From Octopus bimaculoides (taxonomy: Eukaryota): 64,000 nt of DNA. The notes below the pieces were generated by a model. That model was not told where the DNA came from, searched no databases, and saw only the letters and a list, made by a program, of their open reading frames with translations. Where the stretch lies: assembly GCF_001194135.2 (NCBI RefSeq), contig NC_068989.1:53144552-53208551 (forward strand), written 5' to 3'. Both the position numbers and the translations under genes were made by a program. Shown here piece after piece: positions 1 through 24,764 of this stretch; positions within the stretch are counted from its first letter, which is position 1; every line of letters starts with the position of its first letter.

Positions 1-245
1 ATTGTGCAGAAGCTGACCTGGCTACACCAAGCACAAACAAGGAACTTTGCCATACTCAAATTCGGTATGTGACAATCTAATTGTATACACAAGACAACAT
101 AATATAGTCATATGCAATACATATTGCCCACCAGATGCTCCAAACCACATAGGCAAATTTGAAGATTGCTTCACAAGAATTAAAGAAATCTTAATGAAAC
201 TGAAACAAACGTGACCATATTTCTTATGGGTGATTTCCACTACAC
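1..245 (+). mobile_element. CR1-like LINE fragment (AP-endonuclease region)
   Basis: Nucleotide similarity to the CR1 copy at ~7630-8110 (…ccagatgctccaaaccacataggcaaatttgaagattgc… vs …tggatgctccaaatcatgtaggcaagtttgaagactgc…); ends near an LMGDF motif. Confidence 0.75.
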
Positions 246-249
246 AGCC

Positions 250-722
250 ACTCCACATAAACACCCATTTTCTCCTCAGCAAACCAAACACAATACAGAC
301 TTTCCACGACAATCCACCTACTACAACCATTTTTTAGACCTAAATCAGAGAAACACAGATGTGAAATGGAACAAAATGTACAAGAACAACCGAAAATAAT
401 TAACTTATCAAAGAAAATCCTAAGTATTACACAAACTAAAATTCTAGCAAGAGGTTTAAAGTTTACTCCAGCCCCTCGCAGATCGAACCCGAATGAAATT
501 AAGGATAACACTATGGATTTCTGATGAAAATTATGCAAGAAGCACTTCACAACTACACCACCAAAGATGACTCAATAGTAAAAAACAAAAGTGAATACTG
601 TCCTACAAAGGGCAGAAATAAAGCACTTGATGCTTTTTGTGAACACATTACCAGTTTTCCTTTTAATACCCTATAAAAACAACAAATTAAATTCTGCCTT
701 AATGTAAATGAATGGAAAGTCC
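250..722 (+). mobile_element. Penelope-like element (PLE-1), 5' part of ORF, decayed
   Basis: Translates as INLSKKILS…ILARGLKFTPAP…DDSIVKNKSEY…NEWKVL, the typical PLE pre-RT region, with stops. Collinear with the RT that resumes at ~3634. Confidence 0.75.
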
Positions 723-865
723 TAATAGGTAGGAGGAGTCAGAACTCCTCAGAGACAGCGATGCCGCTGGAGAAAGAGGTGCCCCGTCTAATTTATACGT
801 CCTACCAGCGCTGGCGTGTATAAAAACTAACACAGATGACGAAATATATCACATGATTACTTGCA

Positions 866-899
866 TATAAATACACACAAAACAACTCGAAGCCAGTCC
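866..899 (+). promoter_or_regulatory. Putative viral capsid-gene core promoter
   Basis: TATAAATA at 866-873. CCAGTCC at 893-899 fits the Inr consensus YYANWYY with A+1 at 895, 29 nt from the TATA start. VP1 ATG is at 905. Confidence 0.55.
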
Positions 900-904
900 G
901 TGTT

Positions 905-2511
905 ATGCCTCCGCCAAAGAAACGTCCTAAAGAGAAAAAGTCATCAGAACTGCACGTCCCAGGCCACGATTTCTTAGGACCAGGAACAGACCTACATACA
1001 AGAAGATTTCAAGTGCCCCGAAACGAATTAGACGCTATAGCAAAAACACATGACTTACATTACGAGGATCCTACGAAGGACACCTGGGAATCAGACAAGC
1101 ACTTCATCGGCAGCGCTATCAAAACCGGACCACTTGGAGTCCTCTCAGCCGGAGCAATTAGTCTTAAGCATTATTGTGGACTTGANNNNNNNNNNCGAGG
1201 ATCCTACGAAGGACACCTGGGAATCAGACAAGCAATTCATCGGCAGTGCTGTCAAAACCGGACCACTTGGAGTCCTCTCAGCCGGAGCAATTAGTCTTAA
1301 ACATTATTGTGGACTTGATCAAAAATTCAGAGGCAACAGCGGCAATAGTGATAGCGTTACTCATTCTCAGTACGTTGTCGATCTTAAGAAAATGGCTGAA
1401 GCATCTACAAGCAACGAGGGCGCAGCAGGCGCAGCAACAGGCTGGGCAGGAAACCAAGTCAGAGGAGCAACCATCCCAGAAGCAACCGGCAATTTCAGCG
1501 GAGATGTGTGCTTCAAACGAAGATTCAGACATGGAGTTAAAACAACTCAAATGAATCAGGCAACAGTCGACTTCACTAAATTTCAAGGCAGTGAAAAAGG
1601 CTACCATGATGTCGGACACAACGCATACGGCATTGTAAATGCAGAAGACTACATAATACCATACTGGCTAACATCATGGGTCAATCCCATTCAGTTCGAA
1701 CAGACAATCAAGACAGCTACGTCATACCGAATTAAATCTGTCGGTTTCGAAATCTCTGACGTCATAGGTGGCGAATGGACATCAAGGAATAACGAAGAGG
1801 TATTCCTACCAAGCCCCCTGCCTTACTTCGAAATATGGATTGACAACGGCACATACGTAGGGCACGGCAACCTCAAAACCATTACTAAAGTGCCCAACAT
1901 GGGATTCTCATTAATACAACCAGAACAGTTCGTAAATATGGAGCTACCAAAATACAAATTCGCATATTGCGCACCGACAGCTTACGTCAATCAATTATCC
2001 GAATGCGGAATCACAGCAGACAAACAATCATGCACATCGAAAATCATAAGATTCCACGACTGGAGAGAAATGCCGAGCGTACAAAAAGTCAGACAAGGAG
2101 ATGTTTACAGCCACAAATGGGATAACCCATCACAGCTTCGAGTACCACTAACTAATACAAGTATAAATGACACATACACAAGGCATGGTTGCATCTTAAA
2201 CTACGGATCCTCTGTCAACGATGAAACACAACTAGGATTCAACTACACATGGGATGGATGTCTCGACGTCACCACAGCACCTGAGCTTGGAGTAGAAGGA
2301 AAAGAAAACCACGAAAGCTTCGGTGAAACTAGAAAACGCAAAAGACCACATAAAAAAGAAGACCTTAACTACACAGAAATTTCTGACATAAACTACGACC
2401 ACCAGCAACCAATTAACAAAAAGGACGGAACAAGAGGGATCAGCAGCGGCAGCATGGTTACAGCCAATAGAACTCTCATTAACAAAGTACTATACACTTC
2501 CGAAGACCCGC
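905..2511 (+). CDS. VP1: Parvoviral VP1/VP2 capsid protein with N-terminal PLA2 (3' end lost in gap; >=~490 aa after collapsing the 133-nt assembly overlap)
   Basis: N-terminal NLS-like PPPKKRPKEKK; Ca-loop HVPGHDFLGPGT; catalytic LDAIAKTHDLHY and ESDKHF; Gly/Ala-rich MAEASTSNEGAAGAATGWAG (likely VP2 start at 1392, AAAATGG context); helix-A/beta-D-like IPYWLTSWVNPIQFEQTIKTATSYRIKSVGFEISDV. No stop or frameshift once 1063-1185 and 1196-1318 are merged. Confidence 0.85.
1050..1554 (+). CDS. Overlapping +1-frame ORF in the VP1-unique region, ~123 aa, one predicted TM helix (X/ARF1/MAAP/SAT-like accessory protein candidate)
   Basis: ATG lies inside the catalytic His-Asp codons (cAT Gac). Merged product: MTYITRILRR…IIVDL-IKNSEATAAIVIALLILSTLSILRKWLKHLQ…ELKQLK*. 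Open in both copies of the duplicated segment. Confidence 0.55.
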
Positions 2512-3301: not shown

Positions 3302-3633
3302 CAATTAAACACTGTCACGATAAGAAACACTTTCACATAATATCTTTTCATAAAGAACATCCCTCAAACCAACACAGCTTTCAAATGCTGAAAAATATAC
3401 TAAGGAACAACATCGCCAAACCATACGACATGGCAGCCATGAAATTGTTTACTCCTTATGGATTTTGCAAGTATCTAACTCAAAACGATTCTTTAAGATG
3501 GGTAGTATGTGCTAATAACATAAACTCGGAGCAGCAAACAGCTTTACTTCAAAAGCTAACTGACAAAGACTACGATAACACTGATGACGACATGAAATTG
3601 AAATTGACCATTTATCCAATTTTAAATATAGAT
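3302..3633 (+). pseudogene. Probable parvoviral NS1 N-terminal HUH nickase fragment
   Basis: The frame of ORF 3385 extends upstream to IKHCHDKKHFHIISF (HUH motif), followed by an amphipathic helix and TPYGFCKYLTQNDSLRWVVCANN (motif-III-like Tyr). Not PLE-like. Judged by eye. Confidence 0.5.
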
Positions 3634-5460
3634 AGTCTATTCTATGGATTACCTAAAATACACAAAAATCCACATATTTGTAAAGCTTACAAAGTTTCTC
3701 CAAGCCTATGCATTAATGTTCCTCCCCCTACTGACCTCAAACTGAGACCCATCATTGCTGGCTGTTTGCAAAAACCACCATTTGAGCAACTTCCTCACAT
3801 TTTACTCAAACTGTTTCTAAAATATGTTAAAAGATTCATCAGGGATGACTTAGACATGCTTAACCACCTCCTGAAGACAATAAATGAAGGAACCCTGTTA
3901 GTATCATTCGATGTGGTGAATTTGTACACCAATATCCCACACGATTATGGTATAGAGGCAATCACCTTCTGGCTAGAAAAATACCCACAAGAAATCCCAG
4001 GACGCATCAACCACAGATTCATAATTGCAGCACTCAAATTCATCCTACTAAACAACTATTTCACGTTCGATACAGTTTACTATTGACAAAAATGTGGAAT
4101 TGCAATGGGAAGCCCAGCTGCACCAGTGATTGTGAACCTTGTAATGGGTTACCTAGAGCTTAAAATTCATCAATCATCACTACAAAAATATGGTACCTCT
4201 TTTCACTGCTATTTAAAGGAGAAGTGGAAGAGGTATCTGGACGATTGCTTTATACTTTGGAAAGACAGCATGGACAAACTCCTCGATTTCAAAATAGTGC
4301 TTAACAATATTGATAGCAACATACAAGTCACCATGGAACACAGCAGTAAACAACTCCCTTTTCTCAACATCCTAATTAAAATAGTCAATAACCACATCGA
4401 AACAGACATCTTCTATAAACCCACAGATTCTAAACAATACCTATTATTCAACTCATGCCACCCCAAACACATAAAAATTAATATAACTTATAATCTAGCA
4501 AAAAGAATCTGTACTATAGTTTCGGACTCCTATACTCATGAACAAAGACTCCTTGAACTCAGATCAATACTAATCAAAAGACATTACCCAATATCTTTAA
4601 TAAATGATGGAATTAAGCAAGCTAAGGAAATAGACATGCAAGCATGAAGGGAAGTCAACCAAAATACTAAACCAGACTTTAAAATATTCCCATACATCTC
4701 CACACATGACCCTAGAAACAATGAAGCCTTTAATGTTATCATCCAAAATCTACCCATCCTCACAAGAAATAAAATAACGAACAAAATTTCAGGCTCACAC
4801 AAAATGATCAAAAGTAAAATGTAAACTAAATGGTTGAAAAAAATATTAACCAATGCAAGTCTGTATCCATTAACAACAGAACCAGAAGTGAAAAAATGTG
4901 GTCGACCTAACTGTGGTACTTGCCCCCACCTTTTGGAGGGTTCAGAGTTCCACTTTAAACAAGGTGAAATATTTAAGATTAAATCAAATTTCACCTGTGC
5001 CTCGGAAAGTCTAATCTATGCCATTACATGTTTAGGGTGTGGTAATAATTATATTGGCCAAACAAGAATATCATTCAGAAGAACCACTCTCCAAAAACAG
5101 ACAAATACAGGTCAGTGGACACATAGGAAATTAGGATTAAGATTCCATGCACACCTTTCTAATTTTTCCCTTCTATCAATGTTCACAGAACACCTCAATA
5201 CAACAAAGAATGAAAAGAGGCAATCTTCCACAACTAAATATGAACACATATATATTATGTGTTCATATTATGTGTGCTATATAAGGCTGTTATAAAAAAT
5301 AATTCCTTTTACATGTCTTGATGTTTGTCTGTAACTGTTACCCTGATGATGGGGTCATCACCAGATTGCACTATGACGTGTATGGCCCACGGTGGTGAAC
5401 CCTTGAAATGGCCATAGGTGCTTGTGTGTGTTTTTGAGCAGTGTTTTTTATGAACTTTTG
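3634..5460 (+). mobile_element. PLE-1 3' part: reverse transcriptase + GIY-YIG endonuclease + 3' terminal repeat
   Basis: FYGLPKIHK, LRPIIAG, VSFDVVNLYTNIP, AMGSPAAP, WKRYLDDCF, KCGRPNCGTCP, LIYAITCLGCGNNYIGQT; one frame with stops at ~4084, ~4645 and ~4822. Confidence 0.92.
5339..5420 (+). ncRNA. Type I hammerhead ribozyme (PLE-associated)
   Basis: tacc-CTGATGA-(stem II gggtcatcacc/ggtggtgaaccc region)-GAAA-tggcca(palindrome)-TA-ggtg. Confidence 0.7.
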
Positions 5461-5639
5461 TAAGTTTGGTGAGTAGAGACGGATTTTACCTATGGAAGTC
5501 TGCTGTTATTACTTGTACCCTGAAGGAAGTACAGGACCTTCTAATATAACTTTAAATGTTAAATTATTTTAAACTTTTTTGTCATTTTTTGAATTTTTAA
5601 TCGCTTAATTTCATTCGAATTGGAATCTTTATAAAAAGG

Positions 5640-6062
5640 AGAAATATGACTTGCAAAAGAGAACTGAACCTTTAAACCCTAAACAACCCCATTTCGTTTT
5701 AAAAGACCATAAGATAAACTTTTGGAATAGCCCCAAATTACGTCTAATTTGTCCATCCAAATCTGATATTGGCATTCTTAGTAAAAATATACTTGACAAA
5801 TACATACATACTTTAGTCAAAAAATTGAAAATTAGTTTATGGTCCAATTCTTTGCAGGTAGTTGAATGGTTTCGTAACATTAATAACAAACATAACGCCA
5901 AATTTATCCAGTTTGACACATCTAACTTTTATTCATCAATTAACCCCATTATTTTAAACAAAGCACTTTGGTTTGCTCACAAGAAGGCAGGTATGCCTAG
6001 AGAGGAATTTAAAGTTATTAAAGCAGCAAGAAATTCTATAATTAAGTTCAACAAAAAACTAT
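5640..6062 (+). mobile_element. PLE RT fragment (second family), copy a
   Basis: PHFVLKDHKINFWNSPKLRLICPSKSDIG…KFIQFDTSNFYSSI. Confidence 0.85.
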
Positions 6063-6529
6063 ATATATATACGTACGCTCACACGGATCCTGGCCTTTCA
6101 ACTGGATTTGGAGTACCCAACTGCCGGAATTTTTTGTACCTCGGATTACTNNNNNNNNNNNNNNNNNNNNNNNNNNNNNNNNNNNNNNNNNNNNNNNNNN
6201 NNNNNNNNNNNNNNNNNNNNNNNNNNNNNNNNNNNNNNNNNNNNNNNNNNNNNNNNNNNNNNNNNNNNNNNNNNNNNNNNNNNNNNNNNNNNNNNNNNNN
6301 NNNNNNNNNNNNNNNNNNNNNNNNNNNNNNNNNNNNNNNNNNNNNNNNNNNNNNNNNNNNNNNNNNNNNNNNNNNNNNNNNNNNNNNNNNNNNNNNNNNN
6401 NNNNNNNNNNNNNNNNNNNNNNNNNNNNNNNNNNNNNNNNNNNNNNNNNNNNNNNNNNNNNNNNNNNNNNNNNNNNNNNNNNNNNNNNNNNNNNNNNNNN
6501 NNNNNNNNNNNNNNNNNNNNNGAACTTAT

Positions 6530-7130
6530 ATATTTCTAGGGAGGAAATTAATGTAATTTTAGCGGCCCGTAAATCTATCATCAAATTTAACAATAAACTT
6601 TGGATCCATAAGGATACTCCGGAGGCTTTTGATGTTCCTATGGGAAGTTCGGACTCAGCTCAAATAGCAGATGTGGTCTGTTCGTATGTATTATATGAAA
6701 TGGCAGACCAGTTCCCTAATATTAAGGGAGGTCTTTATAGGGACGATTGTCTGCTATACCTCCATAAGGCCTCTGCCCAGAGTATACAAAAAGTTAAAAA
6801 TAGATTAGCCAGATTCTTCAAAAGAATGGGCTTTGGCATTGTTTTTGAGGATGAGGTCTCTGTAGCAAACTTTCTGGACGTTACCTTAGATTTACATAGT
6901 AATACTCATTTCCCATTCCATAAACATTCAACTACTCTCAAGTACATAAGCCCCTTTAGTAATCATCCAAGACATATAACCAGTAATTTGGTTAGGAATA
7001 TCTCAATTCGACTTTCCAAACTTTCTTCTAACTCCCAAATTTTCAATAAGGAGGGTGACTTCTATAATTCAGCCTTATTTAGGGCTGGCTATAAGGAAAA
7101 GGTAGTGTACATTAACTCTTCTAGTGATCT
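6530..7130 (+). mobile_element. PLE RT fragment (second family), copy b
   Basis: FDVPMGSSDSAQIAD…GLYRDDCL…NFLDVTLDL…SNHP. Confidence 0.85.
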
Positions 7131-7209
7131 TTCTCCTTCTACACAACATGATACCCCCTTTACTAGCGTAGATGTACCCATTTCTATTCTTTCCCATTCT
7201 TCAGAAAGT

Positions 7210-9720
7210 AAACCCAAGTGCAAGTGCCTCTACCACCATCAAAGCGAAAAAGCGTGGAGGTGAAAGGGTCAAGAAAGAAGAATTAAAAGCAGGAAAAACC
7301 AAAACTAAAACAAAAGATGAAACAGCCAAAGAAAGAAGCAGACCTGAATAGCCATATAACAAAAAGGATAGAAAGAGACAGCACACACGAATATGCAAAT
7401 TCTATTTGAAAGGTGTCTGCTGGCATGGAAAGGGAGGTGCAAGCTGCCGTTTTGCACCAAAGACCCCACCACATAAACATGAAATAAGGCAGAAACCACC
7501 TGCCAAAAGGAAAGGACTATGCACCACCTGCCCCAAAATGGAGGTACGCAGATGTGTATGCAACAAACCAGACTTAACATGTTCTTGAATGGGCAGCTGC
7601 TGAACAACAATCTTTTTTGTGCATGGCATAAAAGATTGTACAACAGCTGATCTGGCTACATCAATTTCACAGATGGGACTATCCCCAATACACAAGACCA
7701 CCATAGCAAATAAACTCAAGGCAGGCACTACTGGCAACAACACACATCACATCACATCAGTGCTTTTACTGAACATCAGAGGACTGTTAACACTTAGTAA
7801 CAGGACAAAAATTCCTTTCTTGAGACCTTGTTGCATGCAATCAAGCCTTATGCATAGCACTTTCGGAAACACACCTGAAACCAGATAAAGCAAATGCAGA
7901 AATACACACACCACAGTATTATGTTGTATTATGGACCGACAGGAAAGAAAGGTGTACATATAAGACAACTCAATGTAGTACATATAAGACAACCCAATGT
8001 AGTTATATGTGCTACATATCACCCTCTGGATGCTCCAAATCATGTAGGCAAGTTTGAAGACTGCCTTACAAAAATAGAACAACAAATAAGTGTACTTCTT
8101 ATGGGAGACTTCAATATGCCAAATGTCAGATGGCCCAAGCGCCTTTCTCTCCCAGGAATGGCAGGATGCGAACAAGGGCAAGTGAAGTCCCTTGTGAACC
8201 TCATCAACACTTTGTACATGGAACAAATAGTACTCCAACCAACCAGGGCAGGTAACATATTGGATCTCTGCTTCACAAATAATATGGATCTCATCCATAA
8301 TGTGAAAGTGACACCGGCGCTACTCTCGGATCACAACATGATAGAGCTGACCATGTACGGACAAAGGAAACCATAGACATGCAGCCAACAAGAAACTCGC
8401 AGAATCTTTCCAGTTTGAAATTCCATAGGGCAAACTGGAAACAAAACTGGCCGAAATGTCTCTCCTCACCAGACATCGACATGAAACTTCAACAATTCAT
8501 GTATGTAATGCAAGCCATATGCTACAGATGTGTCTGGAGAAAAAGGCCACTGTACACAAAAACAAAATCCTCAGGGAGAGAAAAATTCTTATGAGACGGT
8601 GTACAAAAGTTTCAAATCGCCTAAACAAACAAATTGAAAGCAGTGAAAAGTCCCGCCTGAAAATGTAACTGCTGGAAATTTTAAAACATCTGCAACTCTC
8701 CCATGAAAAAGAAAGAGCAGATAAACAAGCCTGGGCTATAGACAATATAAAATCTAACCCCAGAACTTTCAACAAGTTTGCCAAAGAAACAGCTTCAGTG
8801 CACTGCAGGATAGGGCCACTCCTCAAAAACAATGGTACACTCACACGAAACCCAGTAAGGATAAGTGAAATACTAAATGAGCAAGTCAAAAGTATTTTCA
8901 CTCCACCCTGAGGACACTTGTAAGGCCAACTGATTTTTTTACCACAACAGATATAAAAACAGAGGCAGTGATGATCGATTACATCAATATAAAGGGAGAC
9001 GATGTAATAAGGGCTATAGATGAAATGAACCTAAACTCAGCTACTGGCCCTGATGGATTCCCAGCAATCTTTTTAAAAGTATATAACTGTGTCCTAACAA
9101 GACCACTGCAGATCACAAACTGCATGATCTCGGCATAGTCGGAAAATTGGGAGAATGACTTTCTAAAGGATAGAAGTCAGGAGGTAGTAGCCAATGACAC
9201 ACAAACAGTGAGCGATGTTCCGCAAGGCACTGTTTTGGGACCAGTACTGTTCATAATGGCCCTCTCAGACACGCCCTCAGCCACATAGAGAGCCATAATC
9301 ACAAGTTATGAAGATGATACAAAAGTCTCATAGGTAATACAGAACCCTGAAGACACTATGCACCTGCAATGTGAGCTGGATGAAATATACAAGTGGGCTG
9401 AAAAGAATAGCATGCAGTTTAATGCTGAAAAGTTTCAAGCCTTGTGCTATCAGCATGCAAACCTAAATGCAATACCCATTAAATACACTGGACCTGGAGG
9501 GATTGTAATCCCAGAGGTACAGTCATCCTTTCATGTGCATGTTGCTAAATTGGCAATGAAATGCAGGTGGCTGACAGGATGGATTCTTAGAACTTTTAGA
9601 ACAAGAAATCAGGAAGCCATGATGGTCCTTGTTTTAAGCTACTTTGATTACTGCTTTCAGTTATGGTCACCAACCAGTGTCAAATTAATCTCTGAACTTG
9701 AGGCAATCCAACGAAGCTAC
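7210..9720 (+). mobile_element. CR1-clade LINE, decayed (ORF1 CCCH-finger remnant, AP-endonuclease, RT with internal deletion)
   Basis: CWHGKGGASCRFA; LLNIRGL, MGDFNMP, QPTRAGNILDLCFTN, SDHN; ATGPDGF, VPQGTVLGP, YEDDTK, WAEKNSMQFNAEK. Confidence 0.9.
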
Positions 9721-10085
9721 ATTATATATATNNNNNNNNNNNNNNNNNNNNNNNNNNNNNNNNNNNNNNNNNNNNNNNNNNNNNNNNNNNNNNNNNNNNN
9801 NNNNNNNNNNNNNNNNNNNNNNNNNNNNNNNNNNNNNNNNNNNNNNNNNNNNNNNNNNNNNNNNNNNNNNNNNNNNNNNNNNNNNNNNNNNNNNNNNNNN
9901 NNNNNNNNNNNNNNNNNNNNNNNNNNNNNNNNNNNNNNNNNNNNNNNNNNNNNNNNNNNNNNNNNNNNNNNNNNNNNNNNNNNNNNNNNNNNNNNNNNNN
10001 NNNNNNNNNNNNNNNNNNNNNNNNNNNNNNNNNNNNNNNNNNNNNNNNNNNNNNNNNNNNNNNNNNNNNNNNNNNNNNNNNNNTA

Positions 10086-10591
10086 TATGTGGAAAATGGA
10101 GCAACAAATACAAGAAGCAATTCTGTTGGGCTAAGTATAATTAATTACGAGTAAGACCAGAGTTAGCCCCCTTTTCACCTAAATTTAGGGTTGCTCCCCT
10201 TTACTAACACCGCCGGTGCTATAAATATACGAAGCATCCCTCAATCAAAAAATCACGTGGAGATGCATTTGATTAAAATCGGAATTATGAACTTAAATAG
10301 CACACATCCTACATCCCCTTACAGGAAGACCAACACAACTTCAACTAAAACGTAAGGCTTTCTTTACCTAACGCTATTATTATACCACCATATACATTAA
10401 TATATCCACTAATCACTTCTCCTACATCTCTCCTACCATGAACTCTTAACATACTCCTCAACATTCTGAAGAGATCTGCCAAACCATTTGCCAGATTGAA
10501 ACGTGTGTAAATGACTCATTACATAACCTCCACAATGGCTAACTAGCCCAACAGAATTGCTTCTTGTATTTGTTGCTCCATTTTCCACATA
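10086..10591 (+). mobile_element. PLE terminal (pLTR-like) fragment bounded by a perfect 48-bp inverted repeat
   Basis: 10086-10133 is the exact reverse complement of 10544-10591; body homologous to 23043-23430; contains a hammerhead. Confidence 0.65.
10462..10513 (+). ncRNA. Type I hammerhead ribozyme
   Basis: catt-CTGAAGA-gatctg…cagatt-GAAA-cgtgtg-TA-aatg. Confidence 0.7.
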
Positions 10592-14600: not shown

Positions 14601-15112
14601 CAAATTCCTAATAAACAAACGGGACAGAAAGGCAGGCAAAGCGACACAATGTAATAACCGACGCAGACTCTGTGGAATCAGTATCGAAGATATCACCCAC
14701 ATCATCAGCAGCTGTCCAAAAATGTCATCACTGTATTACCTACCTACGAGACATGATGTTGTGGCCAAGACACTGTACAATGAAATCCGCCGACAGGATA
14801 ACCCCGGGGCTAAGGAGATGAAAACCCATAATGTGGTAGAGGCCATTACCACTNNNNNNNNNNAATGAAATCCGCCGACAGGATAACCCCGGGGCTAAGG
14901 AGATGAAAACCCATAATGTGGTAGAGGCCATTACCACTCACAATATGAAAGAGTATTGGAGGAATGTCCCAATAAAAACCACAATAAAATCCAGGCATAA
15001 TAGACCGGATATAGCAACCTGGGACAGAGAAGAGAAACTGTGTACAGTAGTAGAAATCAGCTGTCCTGTGGATGTCAACGTCACACTAAAGATTAGAAAA
15101 AAAGAGAACAAC
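11640..15112 (+). mobile_element. R4/Dong-clade non-LTR retrotransposon with restriction-like endonuclease, near full-length, frameshifted
   Basis: N-terminal WDDLHPE…LRQQA; RT AGKKGVWGCTEQLLIN, GIFQGDSLS, FVDDLKLY; RLYLKRNKGGRGL; CCHC-like RLCGISIEDITHIISSC; RLE HNRPDIATWDREEKLCTVVEISCP. Confidence 0.88.
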
Positions 15113-15480
15113 TCTGTAGAAAAGGCGCAGGTAGAAACTTCATAAGATGTACCCAGTGCAAACTATAGACACATAAAAGGTGCAGCAATATCACAGGATG
15201 GTTAACCAGGAAGATAGTTTTTGTGTGTGGCAGATGCTCAGTGGCAAAAAACACTGTAAATGAGTAGAAAACAACTTCTGCCACACTCCAAGGAGAAAAA
15301 CTAGACGTAGTTGATAGCTTCCGCTATCTAGGTGACCAAGTTAGCAGCGGGGGATGGTGCGCTGAAAGTGTAGCTGCTAGAATAAGAATAGCCTGGGTAA
15401 AGTTCAGAGAGCTCTTACCTCTGCTGGTGACAAAGGGTCTCTCTCACAGAGTAAAAGTCAGACTGTATGACGCATTGGTT
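15113..15480 (+). mobile_element. RTE-type LINE fragment
   Basis: Cys-rich CRKGAGRNFIRCTQC… followed by EKLDVVDSFRYLGD…AARIRIAWVKFRELLPLL. Confidence 0.8.
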
Positions 15481-15499: not shown

Positions 15500-16150
15500 C
15501 CCTGAGTATAACCAATGTATAATTATCAAAAACTACCTAAAAGAAGCGCAAATAGGGAAATTATATGGTATACACCTCCATTTTCATTAAGAGTCAAGGG
15601 CTTAGCTAAGAAATTTTTGAATATAGTTAAAAAATGTTTTCCTAGGAACCATAAATATCACCACATATTTAATAGATCATCCATTAAAATATCATTCTCC
15701 ACAACACCAAACATAGGATTTTGCTCATGTAAAAATAACGAATTATGCCCGTTAAAAGGCAATTGTAAATGATCCAACGTAATATACAAATGCATAGTTA
15801 CATCAACTAATAATTCACATAATATGGTATATATAGGGAGGTCGATTAATTTTAAACAAAGATTTTTAGTTCACATTCTTTTAACCCAAATATAACTACT
15901 AATACCACATCATTAGCTACATATATACATAAACTCATGAAAAATAAAATCAACTACACACTAGAATGGTCAATAATAGACTCAGCCACACCATACAAAT
16001 TGCCGTCTTTGTACGAAAGAGTCACCACATATATTACTATATAAATACGACAATCTAATAAATAGTCAATCAGATGCTTTTACAACATGTAGACATAAGT
16101 TTTATAAAACCTTTAAATACTATGGAAGATCAAATAAAAATTAAATTTAG
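15500..16150 (+). mobile_element. PLE 3' fragment (linker + GIY-YIG)
   Basis: REIIWYTPPFS…IFNRSSIKISFSTTPNI…CPLKGNC…NVIYKC. Confidence 0.8.
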
Positions 16151-16199
16151 TACATATATACACTTGAGCATAGGTATTGAAGTGGAAATATATTAGAGA

Positions 16200-17850
16200 A
16201 GGTGTAGGGTCGAACTTACAAACTCTTCACATTCCACACAGTTTCACCTTCACCTCCTCCAACCTAATTTACTGCATCAAATGCACCCTATGCAACCAAC
16301 TCTACGTGGGGCAGACGGGCCGCCGGCTGGCCGACCGTTTCACCGAACACCTAAGGGACGTTCGGCTAGGTTCAGACTCCCTCGTCGCTTCCACTTGGCC
16401 AACCACTCTCCCTCTAACATCTCCGTTTTTGGCCTCGCCCTGCACCATGGGTCCACGCCCTCACGACTCCACTTGGAGCAACGCTATATTTTTAACCTTA
16501 ATTCTTCTTTCCCCTTCGGACTCAATACAGCCCCCTCCTCCTTATGATTCTCCCCTTTACGTCTATGCAACACTTTTCTTTATTTTTTTACCACCCCCTC
16601 GTCCCCTTTACATTATATCCATTATTCTCTTATTACACTCACTACATTTTTCCACTTTTTATCTCACCCTTTCCTACATGCACACATACCCACACAAAAA
16701 ATACACGCACCCATACACACACATGTAAGCACACCTACCCCCAACACACATGCATGCACTCACACGCTCAGACTCGCCCACACACTTATACAAACGCACA
16801 TACACACGCTAACAATCACGCAAGCATACACACACACACAAGCATACACACCCTTGCACACATAATCCACATATACCCCCATTCACAAATACCTCCCACA
16901 CACCTGACAACCCATACATACCCTCATTCACATATACCTCCCACACACCTTACATATATACTGCCCACATACATGCGCGCCCTAACACACACATAGACGA
17001 ACGCACATATATACACACACACACCCATATATACGCGCACGCCTACATACACATGCACACAGGAGTGCACACACATACCTGGCACACACATACACACTCA
17101 CATACATAACACACACGCACAAAAACATACACAATACACGCACACACAAAAAATATACACACATGCGCACGGAAACATACAGACACATATAAACACACAC
17201 ACACCCGTACCTAACACTCACAAACCCACACCCACGCACACTTCTCACCAACACTACACACTCACACACATGGGCATAAACAACACACGCACATACAATA
17301 GCAAATGCATGCACACACACGTACACAGCAACGCACATATACACACAAACACCCACGCACGCACAAAAACACACACGCGCACATACAAAATACACACACA
17401 CGTACACATACCCAACACCTACAACCCCACACAAACACGAACACACACATACTCAAAAAACCGCCTGTTGACCTTCCACCTAACACTGTCTATAAGTATC
17501 CACTAACCATTCCTGCTACTAATTCCTTCCACTACGTCATACACACGCACACACACACGTTGTTATCACACACACACTCGCTCACGCACAGATATTCATC
17601 TCCCTTTTTCACTCTCCTGTCTTAGAAAGAACTTTTCCCCCACCATCTCCTCCGGTCTTTTCACAATGTAACCTCGTGGTCATCAGTACCATTTTCCTCT
17701 TTCTCCGTTTTTCCATTCTCCGAACTTTCCATCTTTCCGACGAAGGGCTACGCCCGAAACGTCATACACTCTCTCTTTCCTTTCCCGAGCGTCCAATAAC
17801 ACTATCCGTATCACGTCCTCACTTTGTTGTTTTTTTGTTATTGTTTTTTG
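16200..17850 (+). mobile_element. PLE 3' fragment (GIY-YIG) with CA-rich low-complexity expansion (~16680-17590) and terminal hammerhead
   Basis: SSNLIYCIKCTLCNQLYVGQTGRRLADRFTEHLR; ends near a hammerhead core. Confidence 0.8.
17737..17763 (+). ncRNA. Minimal hammerhead core, U4C variant
   Basis: CCGACGA-a-gggc tac gccc-GAAA-cGTC; stem I poorly formed. Confidence 0.5.
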
Positions 17851-17898: not shown

Positions 17899-18249
17899 GT
17901 ATTTTACTTGTTTCAGTCATTTGACTGTGGCCATGCTGGAGCACCGCCTTTATATATGTGCGTGTGTGTGTATATATATATGCACGTGTAAACATGTGTA
18001 TATGTATGTGTAAACACAGACTTCTCCTTTATCTTCTGTTTTCCCCTTGTTTTCTTATTCTTCTTTTTCGAATACCAAAATAAAGAAATAATTCTACAAA
18101 TATCGATAGACAAATTATTTTGAATGATCCTCCATTTATACATATATACACATAAGAAATAAAATAGACATAATTAAAATTGAATAAATATTCCTAGAAT
18201 TTGAACCCAGAAACCCACCAGTTATAACCTATAATAACTTATCAATGCC

Positions 18250-18462
18250 ACTTTCATGGAACAAATCATACTGCAACCAACCAGATCAGACAACATACTG
18301 GATCTCTGCTTCACAAACAATATGGACATTATCCATAATGTTAAAGTGACACCGACGCTAATCTCGGATCACAATATAATAGAGCTGTCTATGTATGGAC
18401 CAAAAGCTCCTGCAGACATACAGCCTATACGAAGCACCCAAAATCTCTCAAAACTAAACTAA
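18250..18462 (+). mobile_element. CR1-like endonuclease fragment
   Basis: MEQIILQPTRSDNILDLCFTNNMD…ISDHNIIEL, homologous to 8218-8376. Confidence 0.85.
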
Positions 18463-18479
18463 ACTGCTGCAGCAACTTC

Positions 18480-19750
18480 ACTCCTTGTTTGGCAGGATAT
18501 GGATTAGTGAACCTGTACCTGAGGATTGGAGAGATACAGTAATGGTGGTTTTATATAAGGGAAAAGGCAACAGGAATGATTGCGGCAATTATAGGGAAAT
18601 ATCATTGCTTTCTGCCGTAGAAAAGGTTTTATGCAGGGTACTTCTGGATCGTCTGCTGAAACATGTTGCAGATTGTGTTCTTCCAGAAAGTCAATCTGGC
18701 TTTCATGTGGGATACAGCACTGCAGATGTGATTTTCTCAGCTAGGCAGCTTCAGGAAAAATGTGTGGAATGGGGTCTGGATTTATATCAGGTTTTTGTCG
18801 ATCTGACAAAAGCCTTTGATACCGTTAATGCACAGTGGAAAGTCCTCCAGAAACTTGGTTGTCCTGAAAAGTTCCTTGTTTTGATTAGGTCTTTTCATGA
18901 AGACAAAGGGTAGGGTTAATGTTAGAGGTAAAATCTCGGAGCCCATCTCAATAAAAAATGGAGTGAAACAGCGATATTCTGGCACTGACCCTATTTGTCA
19001 TATATTTTGTGGTTTTCTGTATTGCGTTCATAAATTGCAGATATGGTGTTTACATCCATTATCGAACCTCTGGCAGCATATTTAATATCAGGCACTTTGC
19101 TGCAAAAGCAAAGGTATTTACCTCTATCATAAGAGACCTTTTGTATGCAGATGATCGTGATCTAGTAGCACACACAGAGATTGATATGCAACACATTTTG
19201 AATGCATTCTCTGATGCTTGCACTGCCTTAGGATTGACAGTCAGGCTCAAGAAAACTGATGTCATGTACCAACCTGCCCCTGGTAAGCAGTATAGTGAAC
19301 CAAATATCTATGTGTATGGTAAACGACTTGATCAGTTTGTCTACCTGAGAAGCACTTAATAGATAGAGCAATTTGGATACTGAAATTCCATACAGAATTA
19401 GGAAAGTGATGCTTTCGGAAGGTTAGAAAAGGCACCTCTGGAGTCGGTGAGACATATGTAGGAAGACAAAGATAAAGGTGTACAAGGAGTGTGTACTCTC
19501 TTTTCCTAATGTCTGCGAGACCTGGGTCACATATCGATACCACCTTAAACAGCTGGAACGTTTCCATCAGATATGTTTCAGATGGATCTATGATAATAAG
19601 TGGGAGGACTGCATCAGTCATCTTTAGATATTGGAAATATTTCCAGCAAGATTTGCCCCTTTTAATTAACCTGACCATAGCCAGCCAAAAATATTTTTGG
19701 TTCAGACGACCAACGTGAATTTCAGCACAAATCTCATTAGTAAATTTGTG
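18480..19750 (+). mobile_element. RTE (BovB-like) LINE RT fragment, decayed
   Basis: VPEDWRD…KGKGNRNDCGNYREISLLS…LPESQSGF…FVDLTKAFDTV; LLYADD. Confidence 0.88.
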
Positions 19751-19829
19751 AAACACAATTTCACTTTGTAAATAGTTGAGTTACAGCACCCAACATTATT
19801 TGATGCGATATCTGAGCTCTGCGTATTTT

Positions 19830-22800
19830 TTTAGAAAAATTAAATTCCGTAAACATACCAACCATCTACAGAAATATGAAAGAAAAAATTACAGAAATCA
19901 ACATCACGAACAAGATCTTCATTAAGACTAAAAACTTATATGCGGTTGATAAGGACGTTTACAAGCATCTAATTTTGAATTGCATCACTGACCCATACAA
20001 AAAAGACAACACAAATTTATACAAAGAGGTGAATTTGGAGGCAAGAAGAATAGCTAACAATCTTAAGATTAGCAATAGAATAGAATACCTTTCCCCCCAA
20101 CCTGCTTTTATTACCCCAAAAGACCATAAAGCCAATTTTAATAGAAACCCCAAATGTAGATTGATTAATCCTGCAAAAACTGAAATAGGGATTATTAGCA
20201 AATATATTTTAGACCGGATTTTAATTAAGTTAGATAGTGATTTAAATTTACGGATTTGGAAAAATAATAAGTCAGTTATAGATTGGTTTAAAGGGATTAG
20301 CCATAAGCATAGCTGCAAATTTACGCAGTTCGATGTTGTTGATTTTTACCCATCAATATCCAGACCTTTGCTCCTGAAAGCATTAGAATTCGCCAAGCAG
20401 TATGTCAACATCGATAGCTCGGAAATAGACATTATAATGCACGCAAGAAAATCACTTCTTTTTCTCGAGGAATCCACCTGGATTAAAAAGAGTGAAGATT
20501 CTCTTTTCGATGTACCGATGGGGACATACGACGGGGTTGAATTATGCACGCTAATAGGGGCTTACATTCTGCATTATTTAAAACTGGAATTTCCGTTTAT
20601 AGATGCAGGGTTATATAGGGATGACGGTCTTATAGTCACCCATAATTTAAACGGCCATGAACTGGATAAGCTCAGGAAGGATCTTATAACTTTCTTCCAA
20701 AGGATAGGTTTACGGATCACAGTAGATACTAACCTAAAAAAAGTAAATTTCTTAGATGTAAATTTAGACTTGAATTCGGATATATTTAAACCTTACCGTA
20801 AACCAAATGACAAACTATCCTATATTAGCAGAGAAGCCAACCATCCGCCTGTTATTCTTAGAAAATTAGTAACGTAGGTAGGCGAATTTCGTCAATTTCT
20901 GCGGACGAAGCAGTATTCCGTAATGCAGCCCCTTATCATAATAGTGCTTTAAGGAATAGTGGATTCTCTGAGAGGATCCAGTACACCCAGTCTAATGCTG
21001 GCAGCAGCGCAGTACGTAGAACTAGGACTACGAAAGTTTTGTGGTTCAACCCAACTATCAATATGGCCGTAAGAACTAATATAGGTAAGGAATTTTTAAA
21101 ATTGGTCACTAGGCACTTTCAACCTGATCATAAGTTTTACAGAATATTCAATAGAAGAACGCTTAAGATCAGCTATTCTTGCTGCAAAAACTTCAACTCT
21201 TTGATCAGCCAGCACAACAATAAGATAATTGCCAAAAACAATAATGTCGACTGACTCACAAAGAGCTGTAATTTCAAAGATCGAACCTCCTGTCCGTTGG
21301 AAGGGAGATGTCTAGAAAAGGGTATCGTGTATAGAGCCAAAGTCCAGAAAGAAGGCTCGCACGATTATAGAACTTATACAGGAGCTACAGAAAATTCTTT
21401 CAAAACCAGGCTGTATTCGCACAAAAATTCTTTTAGATACCCTGAAAATAGGACAAAGACGAGCCTGGCAAAATACGTCTGGCAATTAAAGGAAAACAGA
21501 GCCCAGCCTTTCAACGTGACATGGAGGATTTTAGGCAGAGCATCGCCTTACAGACACGGTGCCCATAAAAGACCATTGAAATGCAATCTCTATTTGTTGG
21601 AGAAACTGAATATCTTATTCCAAGATAAGAAGGCTCTAAACCAAAGACGCGAACTTTTAAATTCATGTAGACATGCATCCAAATAATTAATGTTGGCAAG
21701 TAATATACCGTATGGGTAGTATATATATATTTTTTTGATAAAGTTTGACTCCTTGTAACCATTGTGCAATCTTACTATTGGATTGGTACCGCATTGTAAG
21801 AATTTTGTATAGACCCCTACGTCATTTTAAGAAAAGCCTTCGACTGTTATATACATAGTTTTTTTCTTCTTCCTTGTTTTTACTTTATTCTATTCTATTT
21901 ATTTTAAAACACTTTGTATACAAATTTTACTGTTTTTATGAACGATTTGACATAGAATTCTATTATGCATGTATTTTCGCCCGATTTTAACTTTTATACA
22001 CCCAGCAGTTTCTTAAAAAGTTGTCTGCATATATACGCTGAGATCTGAAAGGGTTTTTTATGTAGATGTCAGTATTGTAACAATACTTATGTATTTGTAT
22101 GTGTGCGTCTATGCTTACATATAGGGCCTAGGTTTACACTTGTGCATACACAGTTATGATTTCGTGTGTGTGCGTTTTTGTGTATACATGGGTAAGAGTA
22201 TATGCTTATATTTATTTACACATACATGCATCTATTCGCATGTGTGCATCTATGTTATATATGGGAATGTGCGCTTAGGTTCACACTCACATACTTGAAT
22301 GTGTGCATACGCATGTATATGGCTATGTTTGTGAGTATTTACGTACATATCCCCATATATATCTATATATGTGATGCTAATATACATTTTTGTATACACA
22401 TATATACAGTCTAAATTTTATGTAGGTTTACTATATACGTTCTTTTTCTCTCTACTTCTTTCTTCCCATTCCCACCTTTCTTTCTTCCTTTCTGTCCTCA
22501 CGATAGCCACACTTTCTCCCTTTCTATATTAGTAACGTTGTTATCGATACGTTACTCTTTCCCTCTCTACTTTATAGGTTAAGATACAATTTTTGTTACC
22601 AGCGCATAAGTATTTTCGTGCGCGAGCTTAAATGCGCCTAGTATGCGTATATGCTATTGTAATTTTATTTTATTTTGAATGCAGCGTATATTTTATTTTA
22701 TTTTATTGTGTTAATTCGATTATATTATTAATTATTTACAATATGTACTTTGAACCCATTTTTCTATTTAAGGTTTTCTTCGATATTTTTTAAAATAGGA

Positions 22801-22985
22801 TGAATCTATATTAAATTCATTTGTTTTGTTCATTACGCATCCATGACCGTTATTTAAAATGACCAATCAAACAGATTTTATATTACTTTTGATTGCATTG
22901 TTATTCCTTTCCCATTTCTAACAAAACTGTCCGATGAACGGGAACGTGAAACTCAGAGTAACAGTCTTTTGTTATATTTCTGCTG
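19830..22985 (+). mobile_element. PLE-3: RT + GIY-YIG + long 3' region ending in a hammerhead
   Basis: KDHKANFNRNPKCRLINPAKTEIG, QFDVVDFYPSI, VPMGTYDG, LYRDDGL; CPLEGRCLEKGIVYRA…YTGATENSFKTRLYSH. Confidence 0.92.
22926..22965 (+). ncRNA. Minimal type I hammerhead, U4C variant
   Basis: actgt-CCGATGA-acg ggaa cgt-GAAA-ctcagag-TA-acagt. Confidence 0.7.
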
Positions 22986-23042
22986 CTTCTAAATAAAGTA
23001 TATATATGTACACACACACACACGCACATATATATATATCAA

Positions 23043-23440
23043 GTGGAGATGCACTTGACTAAAACTGGAACAATGTTCTTAAATAGCACCCACCCTATAT
23101 CCCCTTACAAGAAGACCAACACAACAACTAAAACGTAAGGCTCTATTTACCTATCACCACTATCACACCACCACATATATTACACCCAATAATTACTTCT
23201 CCTACATTTCGCACACCACAAACTTCGAATATACCCTTCAACACTCTGAAGAGATCGGCCAAACTACTGGCTGCATCGAAACGTACGTAAGTGACTAAGA
23301 CATAATATACAAAATGACTCATTACATAACCTAAACCTCCACACTGACTCATTTCACAAGTTCCACATAATAAAACAACAGCTATCTAGTCCAACGAAAA
23401 TGCCTTTTCTTGTATTTGTTGCTCCATTCTCCAAGTAAAT
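23043..23440 (+). mobile_element. PLE terminal fragment (same family as 10258-10590)
   Basis: Direct nucleotide similarity; shared end ttcttgtatttgttgctccatt. Confidence 0.7.
23242..23293 (+). ncRNA. Type I hammerhead ribozyme, intact core
   Basis: cact-CTGAAGA-gatcggcca…tggctgcatc-GAAA-cgtacg(palindrome)-TA-agtg. Confidence 0.8.
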
Positions 23441-23469
23441 ATATATAATATATATATATATCCTACTCA

Positions 23470-24764
23470 TACATGGAGACCCAAACTTCAATCCATAATT
23501 TTAAAATAAGACCGGTCATCAACTGCATTCAAAGTGCATATAAACAACTCTACAACCCAGGTACATATCTACCTGTTGATGAAGGCATGGTGGAGGGTAA
23601 AAGCAGAGTACGTTTCCGACAATATATGCCAGGAAAACCCACAAAGTGGGGGATCAAAGTTTGGAAGATTTGTGAAGCAGATATGGGGTACTGTTGTGGG
23701 TTTAGTTTTTATACAGGGAGAAGAGAAATGATCTAAGTCAGGGTACAACGAGGTCTGAAATTTATCATTTCCATACCATAACCAGGGCTGTATATTTTTT
23801 GACTTACTTTTTAGTTCAGTCAAACTTGTGGTAGATTTAGCTGTGACAACATACACATGTGCTACAGTAATTGCTTGTAGAAAAGGGCTGTCATTGGATA
23901 AAAAAAAAAAGCAAAATTTTTTTTTAAAAAGTGAAATAATCCAACAGCAGAAAGGAAATCTACCTATGCACAACCACGTGTAAATGAAAATGGCACCCTG
24001 TTTGTTAACCTCGATTATAACAGGTATATGGACGGAGTAGAACAGCTGAATCAAATGATAAGCTATTATCCAATTGGTACACTGGACAATAAATGGTGGT
24101 GATACCTGGATGTTCTTCCTAGCACCAACCACTCAAAGGTGTAGCCAGCCATTCCAAGAGTGTTCATATTATATACCAAATCAGGAGGAGCTCGAAAGCA
24201 GTGTGACGATCTGCAGTTCCAAGCAAATGTAGCAACACAGTTGAGGAAACGTTATTCCTTCAACAAAATAACAGTAGGACAGAAAGCCAAAGCCTGCCAG
24301 AGAGATATCCCTCCCATTTCAGCCAATCTCCACAAATTTAAAAAAAAAAAAGAAAAAAAAAATTAAGGTTGCAAACAGATGTGCTGTGAAAGTCTGCATC
24401 AACAAAACTCTTAGTGGATGGCCAGTTGAAACATCTTTCCAATGAGCATTCTGTAAGGTCGCATTATGTAGAATGGGATGTTTTACAAGTTTCTATGACA
24501 GAAATATTGCATGAATATTATTATATACATGTGTGATTACATTTTATAAATATTTTTAAAATTTACTGTTTCTACTTTTTATTTACCTGTAAATTGCAAT
24601 TTGCCTGCAAGGTGATAAGTTTTGATTTAATTTCTATTTTTAATCTTTATTATATACATTTTTAAGTATTCATGTATGTGTGCAAGTTCATTTCATTTAG
24701 TTGATATATAAGAACATACAATTATAAAAATGCAACAGGATTTTTTTAAACATCAAATGGTTAA
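23470..24764 (+). mobile_element. piggyBac transposase remnant with right end at TTAA
   Basis: PVDEGMVEGKSRVRFRQYMPGKPTKWGIKVWKICEA; DYNRYMDGVEQLNQMISYY; Cys-rich C-terminal remnant; …atgg|TTAA at 24761-24764. Confidence 0.85.

What the first reader, a model, noticed from the sequence alone, without database searches (positions are those of the whole stretch)
1..24764. ~25-kb unidirectional TE/EVE cluster, candidate flamenco-like uni-strand piRNA locus
About 16 of 17 orientable pieces (CR1 x3, PLE x8 of 9, RTE x2, R4, piggyBac, parvoviral EVE) are on the + strand. The two-sided binomial p is ~3e-4 if the pieces are treated as independent, which overstates significance. The region is wall-to-wall diverse fragments and nearly SINE-free, unlike 25-64 kb. 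A minus-strand transcript, the same direction as the host exons at 39-43 kb, would be antisense to all of them. Known: this layout marks uni-strand piRNA clusters (Drosophila flamenco, EVE-rich Aedes clusters). It would imply piRNA-based antiviral memory in a cephalopod. An alternative is purging of sense-oriented LINEs from an intron of the minus-strand gene.
Basis: partly seen in the sequence, partly recalled or inferred. Interest (0 to 1): 0.75.

Follow-up and report, generated by a model that had tools for sequence, protein, structure and literature searches.

The report
Co-oriented transposon nest with viral insert
A 25-kb stretch of an octopus-like genome is packed with retrotransposon pieces and one parvovirus-like insert that all point the same way; this is real and unlikely to be chance, but sequence alone cannot show that it makes piRNAs, and more ordinary causes are at least as likely.

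Summary
The core observation holds. In 1-24764 every protein-coding transposon or viral remnant I could detect lies on the + strand. These are 12-13 pieces from at least 10 insertions: four LINE pieces, four or five Penelope-like pieces, two piggyBac pieces and one EVE with a parvovirus-type PLA2 domain. None lies on the - strand (Pfam on 110 open segments per strand; two homolog libraries). Identified pieces cover 71% of the readable bases. The short multi-copy repeats that fill 25-64 kb are almost absent here (0.18% against 13.6% of bases).

Three things differ from the finding:
- I found no minus-strand piece.
- The + run does not stop at 24764: LINE fragments at 32.2 and 39.4 kb are also +.
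- No minus-strand host exon was found at 39-43 kb. The only host-like exon is a Mis12-like one at 54.6 kb, on the - strand.

One Penelope-like copy is split by an 8.4-kb block of same-oriented LINEs, so this is a nested island.

The piRNA-cluster reading cannot be tested here. Antisense bias inside a minus-strand transcription unit, or same-strand nesting, explains the layout equally well. I put the piRNA reading at about 0.15.

The parts
17..211 (+). LINE endonuclease-like fragment (LINE-a), related to the endonuclease region of LINE-b
   Evidence: 64% aa identity and 76.5% nt identity to 7975-8082, same orientation. No Pfam hit of its own.
857..2510 (+). Parvovirus-like EVE: VP1-type PLA2 domain (about 947-1078) followed by a long open frame that runs into the gap at 2512. 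It contains the 10-N gap, which is an unmerged overlap.
   Evidence: Phospholip_A2_4, E 2.6e-7 and 1.6e-8. The 438-aa frame at 1197-2510 has no interruption. Only two homologs were found, both EVE-like. No Pfam, PDB or IMG/VR match for the body.
3304..5079 (+). Penelope-like element copy 1 (RT region); starts at the gap
   Evidence: RVT_1 at 3838-4275, E 2.3e-8. Penelope-like library hits at 3826-5079. About 2 in-frame stops in the first 450 codons.
5612..6151 (+). Penelope-like element copy 2a (N-terminal and RT part); runs into the gap at 6151
   Evidence: tblastn with 120 library proteins, best E 4e-30. HMM positions 64-201.
6523..7152 (+). Penelope-like element copy 2b, 5' half; its 3' half is at 15512-16141
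   Evidence: HMM positions 181-379, E 9e-57. Colinear with 15512-16141 against 37 reference proteins, with a median gap of 5 residues.
7350..9729 (+). LINE-b: zinc-finger ORF1-like part (about 7388-7478), endonuclease (8002-8343), RT (9145-9492). Heavily decayed; runs into the gap at 9732.
   Evidence: Exo_endo_phos_2 E 6e-11 and RVT_1 E 6e-12. zf-CCCH. 14 in-frame stops between the two domains.
10252..10608 (+). piggyBac-related fragment, a copy of the region upstream of the transposase domain at 23038-23452
   Evidence: 77.5-81% nt identity, same orientation.
11728..15151 (+). LINE-c, near full-length ORF2 (endonuclease, RT, C-terminal region); contains the 10-N overlap gap
   Evidence: tblastn with 150 of 150 library proteins, best E 5e-145. 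HMM positions 302-1067. RVT_1 E 2e-12. At least 4 frameshifts.
15512..16141 (+). Penelope-like element copy 2b, 3' half
   Evidence: HMM positions 381-559. Colinearity with 6523-7152.
16174..16725 (+). Open frame with a weak GIY-YIG endonuclease match
   Evidence: GIY-YIG E 0.0013, 19.4 bits, below the curated cut-off of 22.6.
18238..19356 (+). LINE-d (endonuclease piece plus RT), same family as LINE-b
   Evidence: 76% aa and 80% nt identity to 8200-8410. RVT_1 E 7e-11 and 2.5e-4. YADD box on +.
19828..21716 (+). Penelope-like element copy 4, full length relative to the about 600-aa family
   Evidence: HMM positions 2-585, best E 2e-142. 48% identity to P0001-P0003. 1 stop and 1 frameshift.
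23038..23733 (+). piggyBac fragment with part of the transposase domain
   Evidence: DDE_Tnp_1_7 at 23449-23733, E 3.2e-18, profile positions 105-179 of 349.
32235..32734 (+). LINE RT fragment outside the finding's range, same orientation
   Evidence: RVT_1 x2, best E 2e-6. tblastn with 47 library proteins, best E 1e-11.
39384..40046 (+). LINE C-terminal fragment outside the finding's range, same orientation.
   Evidence: tblastn with 61 library proteins, best E 2e-10. HMM E 1.6e-6.
54574..54705 (-). Candidate host exon, Mis12-like (kinetochore protein), middle of the domain
   Evidence: Pfam Mis12 E 6.5e-6 as a lone segment. 20.5 bits in a frame tile, profile positions 80-127 of 231, below the cut-off of 25.7. 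No PDB or database homolog found.

Best explanation
The region is an ordinary nested island of retroelements with no special RNA function.

How it was built:
- An older Penelope-like copy was split by LINE insertions.
- Further LINE, Penelope-like and piggyBac copies landed in or beside the earlier ones.
- One parvovirus-like sequence also integrated, and its readable part is unbroken.

Why all sense strands are on +. Two known, non-exclusive causes would give this:
- The island lies inside or just downstream of a minus-strand transcription unit (a Mis12-like exon lies at 54.6 kb). LINE and Penelope-like copies in the sense orientation of the host transcript carry polyadenylation and splice signals and are removed by selection, so antisense copies remain.
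- Target-primed reverse transcription prefers the T-rich strand opposite the A-rich sense strand of elements already present. New copies therefore nest head-to-tail.

What is shown: the pieces, their strands, the nesting and the repeat contrast. What is inferred: both causes of the co-orientation, and the position relative to a host gene.
For: - All detectable coding remnants in the whole 64-kb window are on +, not only those in 1-24764. Pfam gave + hits and no - hits in both halves. Both libraries hit + only, including 32.2 kb and 39.4 kb.
- A minus-strand Mis12-like exon lies at 54574-54705. The island therefore lies 3'-ward of it on the transcribed strand.
- Short SINE-like repeats in 25-64 kb are roughly balanced in relative orientation: 4:4, 4:3, about 6:2 and 2:2 in four families. 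This is expected if selection acts mainly on long elements that carry signals.
- Nesting is direct. The halves of one Penelope-like copy at 6523-7152 and 15512-16141 are colinear against 37 references. The 8.4 kb between them holds two LINEs in the same orientation.
- The + strand is A-rich, with AT skew of 0.12-0.25 over 1-16 kb. That makes the opposite strand the T-rich target.
- Antisense bias of intronic LINE and LTR elements is established in mammals (PMC3088655, PMC3517506).
- piRNA clusters have a low base rate: 0.27% of the Lymnaea stagnalis genome (PMC6128900).
Against: - Published intronic antisense bias is moderate. With a 2:1 prior, 10 of 10 in one orientation still has a probability of about 0.017, and 0.056 with a 3:1 prior.
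- The host gene rests on one exon whose score in the tile lies below Pfam's cut-off. No other exon was found, so an intronic position is not shown.
- The near absence of SINE-like repeats is not explained, even in the old, decayed parts (LINE-b has 14 in-frame stops).
- The same-strand nesting preference comes from my own knowledge of LINE biology. It was not tested for these families.
Confidence: 0.62

Rival explanations
1. Uni-strand (flamenco-like) piRNA cluster. A long minus-strand precursor is transcribed through the island, perhaps from a promoter to the right of 25-40 kb. It is processed into piRNAs antisense to all the LINE, Penelope-like and piggyBac copies and to the parvovirus-like EVE.
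For: - At least 10 of 10 independent insertions are co-oriented, binomial p 0.002.
- The content is nested, diverse and 71% transposon or EVE.
- An EVE is present.
- Molluscs, including Octopus bimaculoides, have piRNA-producing loci with ping-pong and phasing signatures (PMC12479628, PMC6128900).
- From my own knowledge, EVEs in Aedes are concentrated in such clusters.
Against: - No small-RNA or transcript evidence is available here.
- The orientation run has no boundary at 24764 and continues to at least 40 kb.
- The base rate is low: 0.27% of a snail genome (PMC6128900). Clusters there were enriched for Gypsy and DNA transposons, not for LINEs.
- At the paralogous EVE locus in O. vulgaris the LINE fragments are opposite to the EVE.
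- The EVE's unbroken 438-aa frame and dN/dS of 0.13-0.26 against its paralogs show only that it diverged as a virus and that its readable part is unbroken. They say nothing about piRNA use.
- The window was picked out for this pattern, so there is a selection effect.
Confidence: 0.15
2. Chance plus insertion mechanics only. The co-orientation comes from a few events (tandem or nested head-to-tail insertion, duplication of composite blocks) in untranscribed DNA, with no selection and no function.
For: - Several pieces collapse into fewer events. Two Penelope-like pieces are one copy.
- LINE-a, LINE-b and LINE-d are one family, and the two piggyBac pieces are copies of one another.
- From my own knowledge, Penelope-like elements commonly form partial tandems.
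Against: - Even after collapsing, at least 10 events of four unrelated element types share one strand.
- The copies are 76-81% identical, not recent block duplicates.
- LINE fragments 8 and 15 kb outside the island share the orientation.
Confidence: 0.18
3. Assembly artefact. The island is a scaffold of repeat contigs whose order and orientation are unreliable, so the pattern is not a property of the genome.
For: - Five gaps lie in 25 kb.
- Two are unmerged overlaps, and one joins two non-identical copies.
- A perfect 48-nt inverted repeat abuts the gap at 9732-10083.
Against: - Each of the six contigs between gaps carries + pieces on its own. Random mis-orientation of contigs would mix strands, not unify them.
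- The largest contig (14864-38017) alone holds five + pieces of three types plus the 32-kb LINE fragment.
Confidence: 0.05

Closest known systems
Drosophila flamenco and other uni-strand piRNA clusters (van Lopik et al. 2023, cited in PMC12479628)
   Same: Tens of kilobases of nested, fragmentary transposons nearly all in one orientation, so that one transcript would be antisense to all of them.
   Different: flamenco is defined by small RNAs, a mapped promoter, a precursor transcript and conserved synteny. It is dominated by Gypsy-type LTR elements. Here there are no RNA data, the content is LINE, Penelope-like and piggyBac, and no orientation boundary was found inside the window.
EVE-rich piRNA clusters of Aedes mosquitoes (for example PMC7522710)
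   Same: A non-retroviral viral fragment embedded among co-oriented transposon fragments.
   Different: In Aedes the EVEs derive mostly from RNA viruses, produce mapped piRNAs, and one has been shown to limit its cognate virus. Here the EVE is parvovirus-like (PLA2 domain only), has no known exogenous relative, and no piRNAs are shown.
Antisense orientation bias of LINE and LTR elements in introns (PMC3088655, PMC3517506)
   Same: Long elements that carry signals are antisense to a host transcription unit, while short SINE-like repeats are roughly balanced.
   Different: The published bias is a modest genome-wide skew, not 10 of 10 in one locus. An intronic position is not demonstrated here, and the bias has not been measured in cephalopods as far as I found.
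Nested transposon islands of large genomes
   Same: Elements are inserted into elements (a Penelope-like copy split by 8.4 kb of LINEs), and 71% of the bases are transposon-derived.
   Different: Uniform orientation and the lack of the genome's commonest short repeats are not general features of such islands.

Membership tests
Uni-strand (flamenco-like) piRNA cluster | Dense 24-31 nt, 1U-biased, 2'-O-methylated small RNAs mapping to one strand | not testable with these tools
   No small-RNA data can be reached. Public O. bimaculoides libraries exist (PMC12479628).
Uni-strand (flamenco-like) piRNA cluster | Transposon fragments overwhelmingly in one orientation | tested here: met
   All 12-13 detected pieces are +, none is -. 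The direction of transcription is unknown.
Uni-strand (flamenco-like) piRNA cluster | Nested, fragmentary, diverse transposon content | tested here: met
   71% coverage, four element types, and one copy split by others.
Uni-strand (flamenco-like) piRNA cluster | Single promoter and a long one-strand precursor transcript; a defined cluster boundary | tested here: inconclusive
   No transcript data. The orientation run has no boundary at 24764 and continues to at least 40 kb.
Endogenous parvoviral element | VP1 unique region with a PLA2 domain | tested here: met
   Phospholip_A2_4, 31.2 bits against a cut-off of 23.9, E 2.6e-7; E 1.6e-8 as a lone segment.
Endogenous parvoviral element | Capsid body recognisably related to parvoviral VP | tested here: not met
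   No Pfam family, no PDB sequence match at E up to 1, and no relative in IMG/VR. The AlphaFold model was unusable (pLDDT 27.6), so the fold could not be compared.
Endogenous parvoviral element | NS1/Rep gene | tested here: not met
   No such family in any open segment of at least 45 aa on either strand. The part upstream of 857 holds other elements.
Endogenous parvoviral element | Physically joined to host DNA | tested here: met
   The contig 1-1185 holds both a LINE fragment (17-211) and the PLA2 domain.
Penelope-like elements | RT followed by a GIY-YIG endonuclease in one ORF | tested here: inconclusive
   RVT_1 passes for copy 1. GIY-YIG is only a sub-threshold hit at 16174-16725. Four full-length relatives give no Pfam family at E 0.01, and a 40-sequence profile gives no PDB hit. 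The assignment rests on motifs I recognise from my own knowledge.
piggyBac | DDE_Tnp_1_7 transposase domain | tested here: met
   66.6 bits against a cut-off of 22.4, E 3.2e-18, partial domain.
Intronic antisense-biased transposons | The region lies inside a gene transcribed from the opposite strand | tested here: inconclusive
   One minus-strand Mis12-like exon at 54574-54705. No other exon was found.

The most novel reading that the evidence does not exclude
The island, possibly extending to about 40 kb, is a uni-strand piRNA cluster of an octopus that has captured a parvovirus-like sequence whose readable part is still unbroken. It would yield antisense piRNAs against that virus lineage. 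This would be the first EVE-bearing flamenco-type locus described in a cephalopod.
Probability: 0.15. Interest if true: 0.65.

Novelty: new member of a known kind. Interest (0 to 1): 0.35.

Why it matters
If small RNAs do come from the minus strand here, EVE-based piRNA memory of DNA viruses would extend beyond arthropods to cephalopods, and octopus researchers would have a concrete locus to follow. If they do not, the locus is still a clear case for measuring how strongly transcription or target choice orients LINE and Penelope-like insertions in a large mollusc genome. The EVE lineage is also of interest in itself. At least three diverged copies exist in octopus-related data, no exogenous relative is known, and I found no paper on it.

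Tried and rejected
- Whole-frame Pfam tiles with X at stops were too insensitive and costly, so I switched to pooled open segments.
- PDB sequence searches found nothing useful for the EVE body, the Penelope-like ORF, a short LINE-like segment at 15268-15519, the Mis12-like exon, or a 40-sequence Penelope-like profile.
- The AlphaFold model of the EVE frame, built from a 3-sequence alignment, failed (pLDDT 27.6). No fold search was run.
- The IMG/VR scan for EVE relatives found none.
- The last homolog search, on the 61-aa Mis12-like segment, found no candidate. The host gene could therefore not be mapped.
- Pfam on minus-strand segments and full frames of 38531-44500 found no exon.
- An exact-product look-up of a window ORF found no record, so the source assembly was not identified.
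- Weak HMM hits (E 0.1-50) are also + biased, because the + strand is A-rich. They were rejected as evidence. For the same reason, the excess of long open frames on + is not evidence by itself.
- The weak minus-strand LINE hit at 18915-19401 was rejected as the antisense of a true + RT.
- Long open frames on both strands at 10.9-11.6 kb and 16.8-17.5 kb are simple repeats.
- Rfam and tRNA scans found nothing.
Full report
SCOPE AND METHOD

The window has nine N runs, five of them inside 1-24764. It is A-rich on the + strand throughout, with AT skew of +0.01 to +0.25, strongest over 1-16 kb. An A-rich strand has fewer stop codons. The excess of long open frames on + (5361 against 2630 residues in frames of at least 100 aa) is therefore not evidence on its own, and I relied on homology.

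I scanned every stop-free open segment of at least 45-46 aa against Pfam, pooled by strand and by half of the window. I also built two local libraries of relatives and searched them against the window with tblastn and HMMs:
- 120 Penelope-like proteins.
- 150 LINE proteins.

THE OBSERVATION

In 1-24764 the + strand segments hit these Pfam families (places):
- RVT_1 x4 and Exo_endo_phos_2 x2.
- Exo_endo_phos, DDE_Tnp_1_7 (piggyBac type) and Phospholip_A2_4 (parvoviral VP1 type), once each.
- A weak GIY-YIG and a zf-CCCH.

The 110 minus-strand segments hit nothing related to transposons or viruses, and the ten longest gave nothing individually. Both libraries hit the + strand only, down to domain E 0.1. 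The single weak minus hit, at 18915-19401, is the antisense of a + strand RT that carries a YADD box.

The pieces are these:
- LINE-a, 17-211.
- The EVE, 857-2510.
- Penelope-like copy 1, 3304-5079.
- Penelope-like copy 2a, 5612-6151.
- Penelope-like copy 2b, in two halves at 6523-7152 and 15512-16141.
- LINE-b, 7350-9729.
- A piggyBac-related fragment, 10252-10608.
- LINE-c, 11728-15151.
- A weak GIY-YIG frame, 16174-16725.
- LINE-d, 18238-19356.
- Penelope-like copy 4, 19828-21716.
- piggyBac, 23038-23733.

Together they cover 71% of the readable bases. By eye I also see a Penelope-like N-terminal motif near 402-522 and a LINE RT tail at 15268-15500, both on +. Neither reached significance, so I do not count them.

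After collapsing related pieces I count at least 10 independent insertions, all +. The two-sided binomial p is 0.002, or 0.0005 if the two fragments further right are added.

REPEAT CONTRAST

Self-blastn shows short multi-copy repeats at depth 3 or more over 13.6% of 24765-64000 (25 islands). In 1-24764 they cover 0.18% (one 42-nt island). Repeats flanking an unrelated Octopus vulgaris locus match only 27-62 kb of the window, at up to 90.6% identity. That also places the window in or near the octopuses. Within 25-64 kb these repeats are roughly balanced in relative orientation.

GAPS

- Both 10-N gaps are flanked by direct duplications (123 nt at 96.7%, 75 nt at 100%). The same peptide is encoded on both sides, and the frames agree when the duplicated stretch is counted once. 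They are unmerged contig overlaps, not breaks in the elements.
- The flanks of 6151-6521 overlap by about 50 residues in Penelope-like coordinates at 65% identity, with no nucleotide match. They belong to two copies or to a misjoin.
- The gaps at 2512-3301 and 9732-10083 cut open frames or separate different elements, so continuity there is unknown.
- A perfect 48-nt inverted repeat abuts the gap at 9732-10083.

Mis-orientation of contigs cannot create the pattern, because each contig carries + pieces on its own.

ANATOMY

The pieces at 6523-7152 and 15512-16141 were compared separately with 37 reference proteins. The first ends, and the second starts, at adjoining reference positions (median distance 5 residues). 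One Penelope-like copy was therefore split by an 8.4-kb block. The block holds LINE-b, a piggyBac fragment, an (ACAT)n array and LINE-c, all in the same orientation.

The state of decay differs between elements:
- LINE-b has 14 in-frame stops between its two domains.
- LINE-c has at least 4 frameshifts.
- Penelope-like copy 4 has one stop and one frameshift.
- The EVE frame has none over 438 codons.

The island therefore grew over a long time.

THE EVE

The PLA2 domain is significant. The 438-aa body has only two homologs:
- An Octopus vulgaris hypothetical protein, P0122, which also has a PLA2 hit.
- A 255-aa product, P0121, from a Logan assembly contig.

The body has no Pfam, PDB or IMG/VR match, and the structure prediction failed. 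Calling it 'parvoviral' therefore rests on the PLA2 domain alone.

Between the copies dN/dS is 0.13-0.26, with dS near saturation. The copies therefore diverged under purifying selection, most simply as viruses before separate integrations. At the O. vulgaris locus the flanks are not syntenic with the window. The two LINE fragments there are opposite to the EVE.

SURROUNDINGS

The + run does not end at 24764. RVT_1 segments near 32.2-32.8 kb and a LINE C-terminal fragment at 39384-40046 are also +.

On the minus strand of 24765-64000 the only meaningful family is Mis12. I located it at 54574-54705, profile positions 80-127 of 231, with 20.5 bits in the tile against a cut-off of 25.7. This is a candidate middle exon of a minus-strand gene whose later exons would lie towards the island.

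I found no exon at 38531-44500 and could not map the rest of the gene.

INTERPRETATION

The layout is what a uni-strand piRNA cluster looks like. It is also what antisense bias in a minus-strand transcription unit would give (PMC3088655, PMC3517506), and what head-to-tail nesting into A-rich elements would give.

Points for the ordinary readings:
- The orientation extends across the window towards a minus-strand exon.
- Only the long, signal-bearing elements are biased.
- piRNA clusters have a low base rate: 0.27% of the Lymnaea stagnalis genome (PMC6128900).
- The window was selected for this pattern.

Points for the piRNA reading:
- Published intronic bias is too weak to make 10 of 10 likely (0.017 at a 2:1 prior).
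- The EVE is present.
- piRNA loci exist in octopus (PMC12479628).

The absence of SINE-like repeats from even the old parts of the island is explained by neither reading.

My estimates are:
- 0.62 for an ordinary nested island oriented by transcription-linked selection and/or target choice.
- 0.18 for insertion mechanics and chance alone.
- 0.15 for a piRNA cluster.
- 0.05 for an assembly artefact.

NOVELTY

Co-oriented transposon islands, intronic antisense bias, and piRNA clusters with EVEs are all known kinds. What is new is modest: a previously undescribed parvovirus-like EVE lineage in octopus (no paper found), and a specific, testable candidate locus.

Noticed in passing
window 1063-1318 and 14779-14938: Both 10-N gaps are flanked by direct duplications (123 nt at 96.7%, 75 nt at 100%). 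These are unmerged overlapping contig ends. The apparent frame changes there are assembly artefacts.
   Followed up: yes
window 5993-6070 and 6532-6609 (flanks of gap 6151-6521): The two flanks encode overlapping parts of the Penelope-like protein at only 65% identity, with no nucleotide match. The scaffold joins two different copies, or the copies are in tandem.
   Followed up: partly
window 10086-10133 and 10544-10591: A perfect 48-nt inverted repeat lies immediately after the gap at 9732-10083. It may be an assembly palindrome or the terminal repeats of a roughly 500-bp DNA element.
   Followed up: no
window 54574-54705 (-): A Mis12-like (kinetochore protein) exon candidate, the only host-like coding signal found in the window. 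The database search with the 61-aa segment that contains it (54556-54738) found no candidate sharing three 5-residue words.
   Followed up: partly
No minus-strand Pfam hit in 38531-44500.
   Followed up: yes
L001 10001-11461 (O. vulgaris OX597831.1) and L002 (Logan SRR11869391 contig): Paralogous copies of the EVE: 57% and 72% aa identity, dN/dS 0.13-0.26, dS near saturation. The O. vulgaris copy has 2 stops in the aligned frame. The Logan contig carries five same-strand ORFs, including a PLA2 ORF, and is reported in 4 samples. No exogenous relative was found.
   Followed up: partly
window 24765-64000: At least four families of short interspersed repeats, in both orientations, make up about 14-24% of this part. 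Their near absence from 1-24764, even from old decayed elements, is unexplained.
   Followed up: partly
window 24989-25313: A 181-bp unit in 1.8 tandem copies (87% matches), just right of the finding's end.
   Followed up: no
window 11113-11519 and 16817-17449: An (ACAT)n-type microsatellite and a CA-rich low-complexity tract give long spurious open frames on both strands.
   Followed up: yes
whole window: Sub-threshold HMM and tblastn hits are themselves strongly + biased because the + strand is A-rich. Weak matches and ORF lengths cannot be used to count orientation here.
   Followed up: yes
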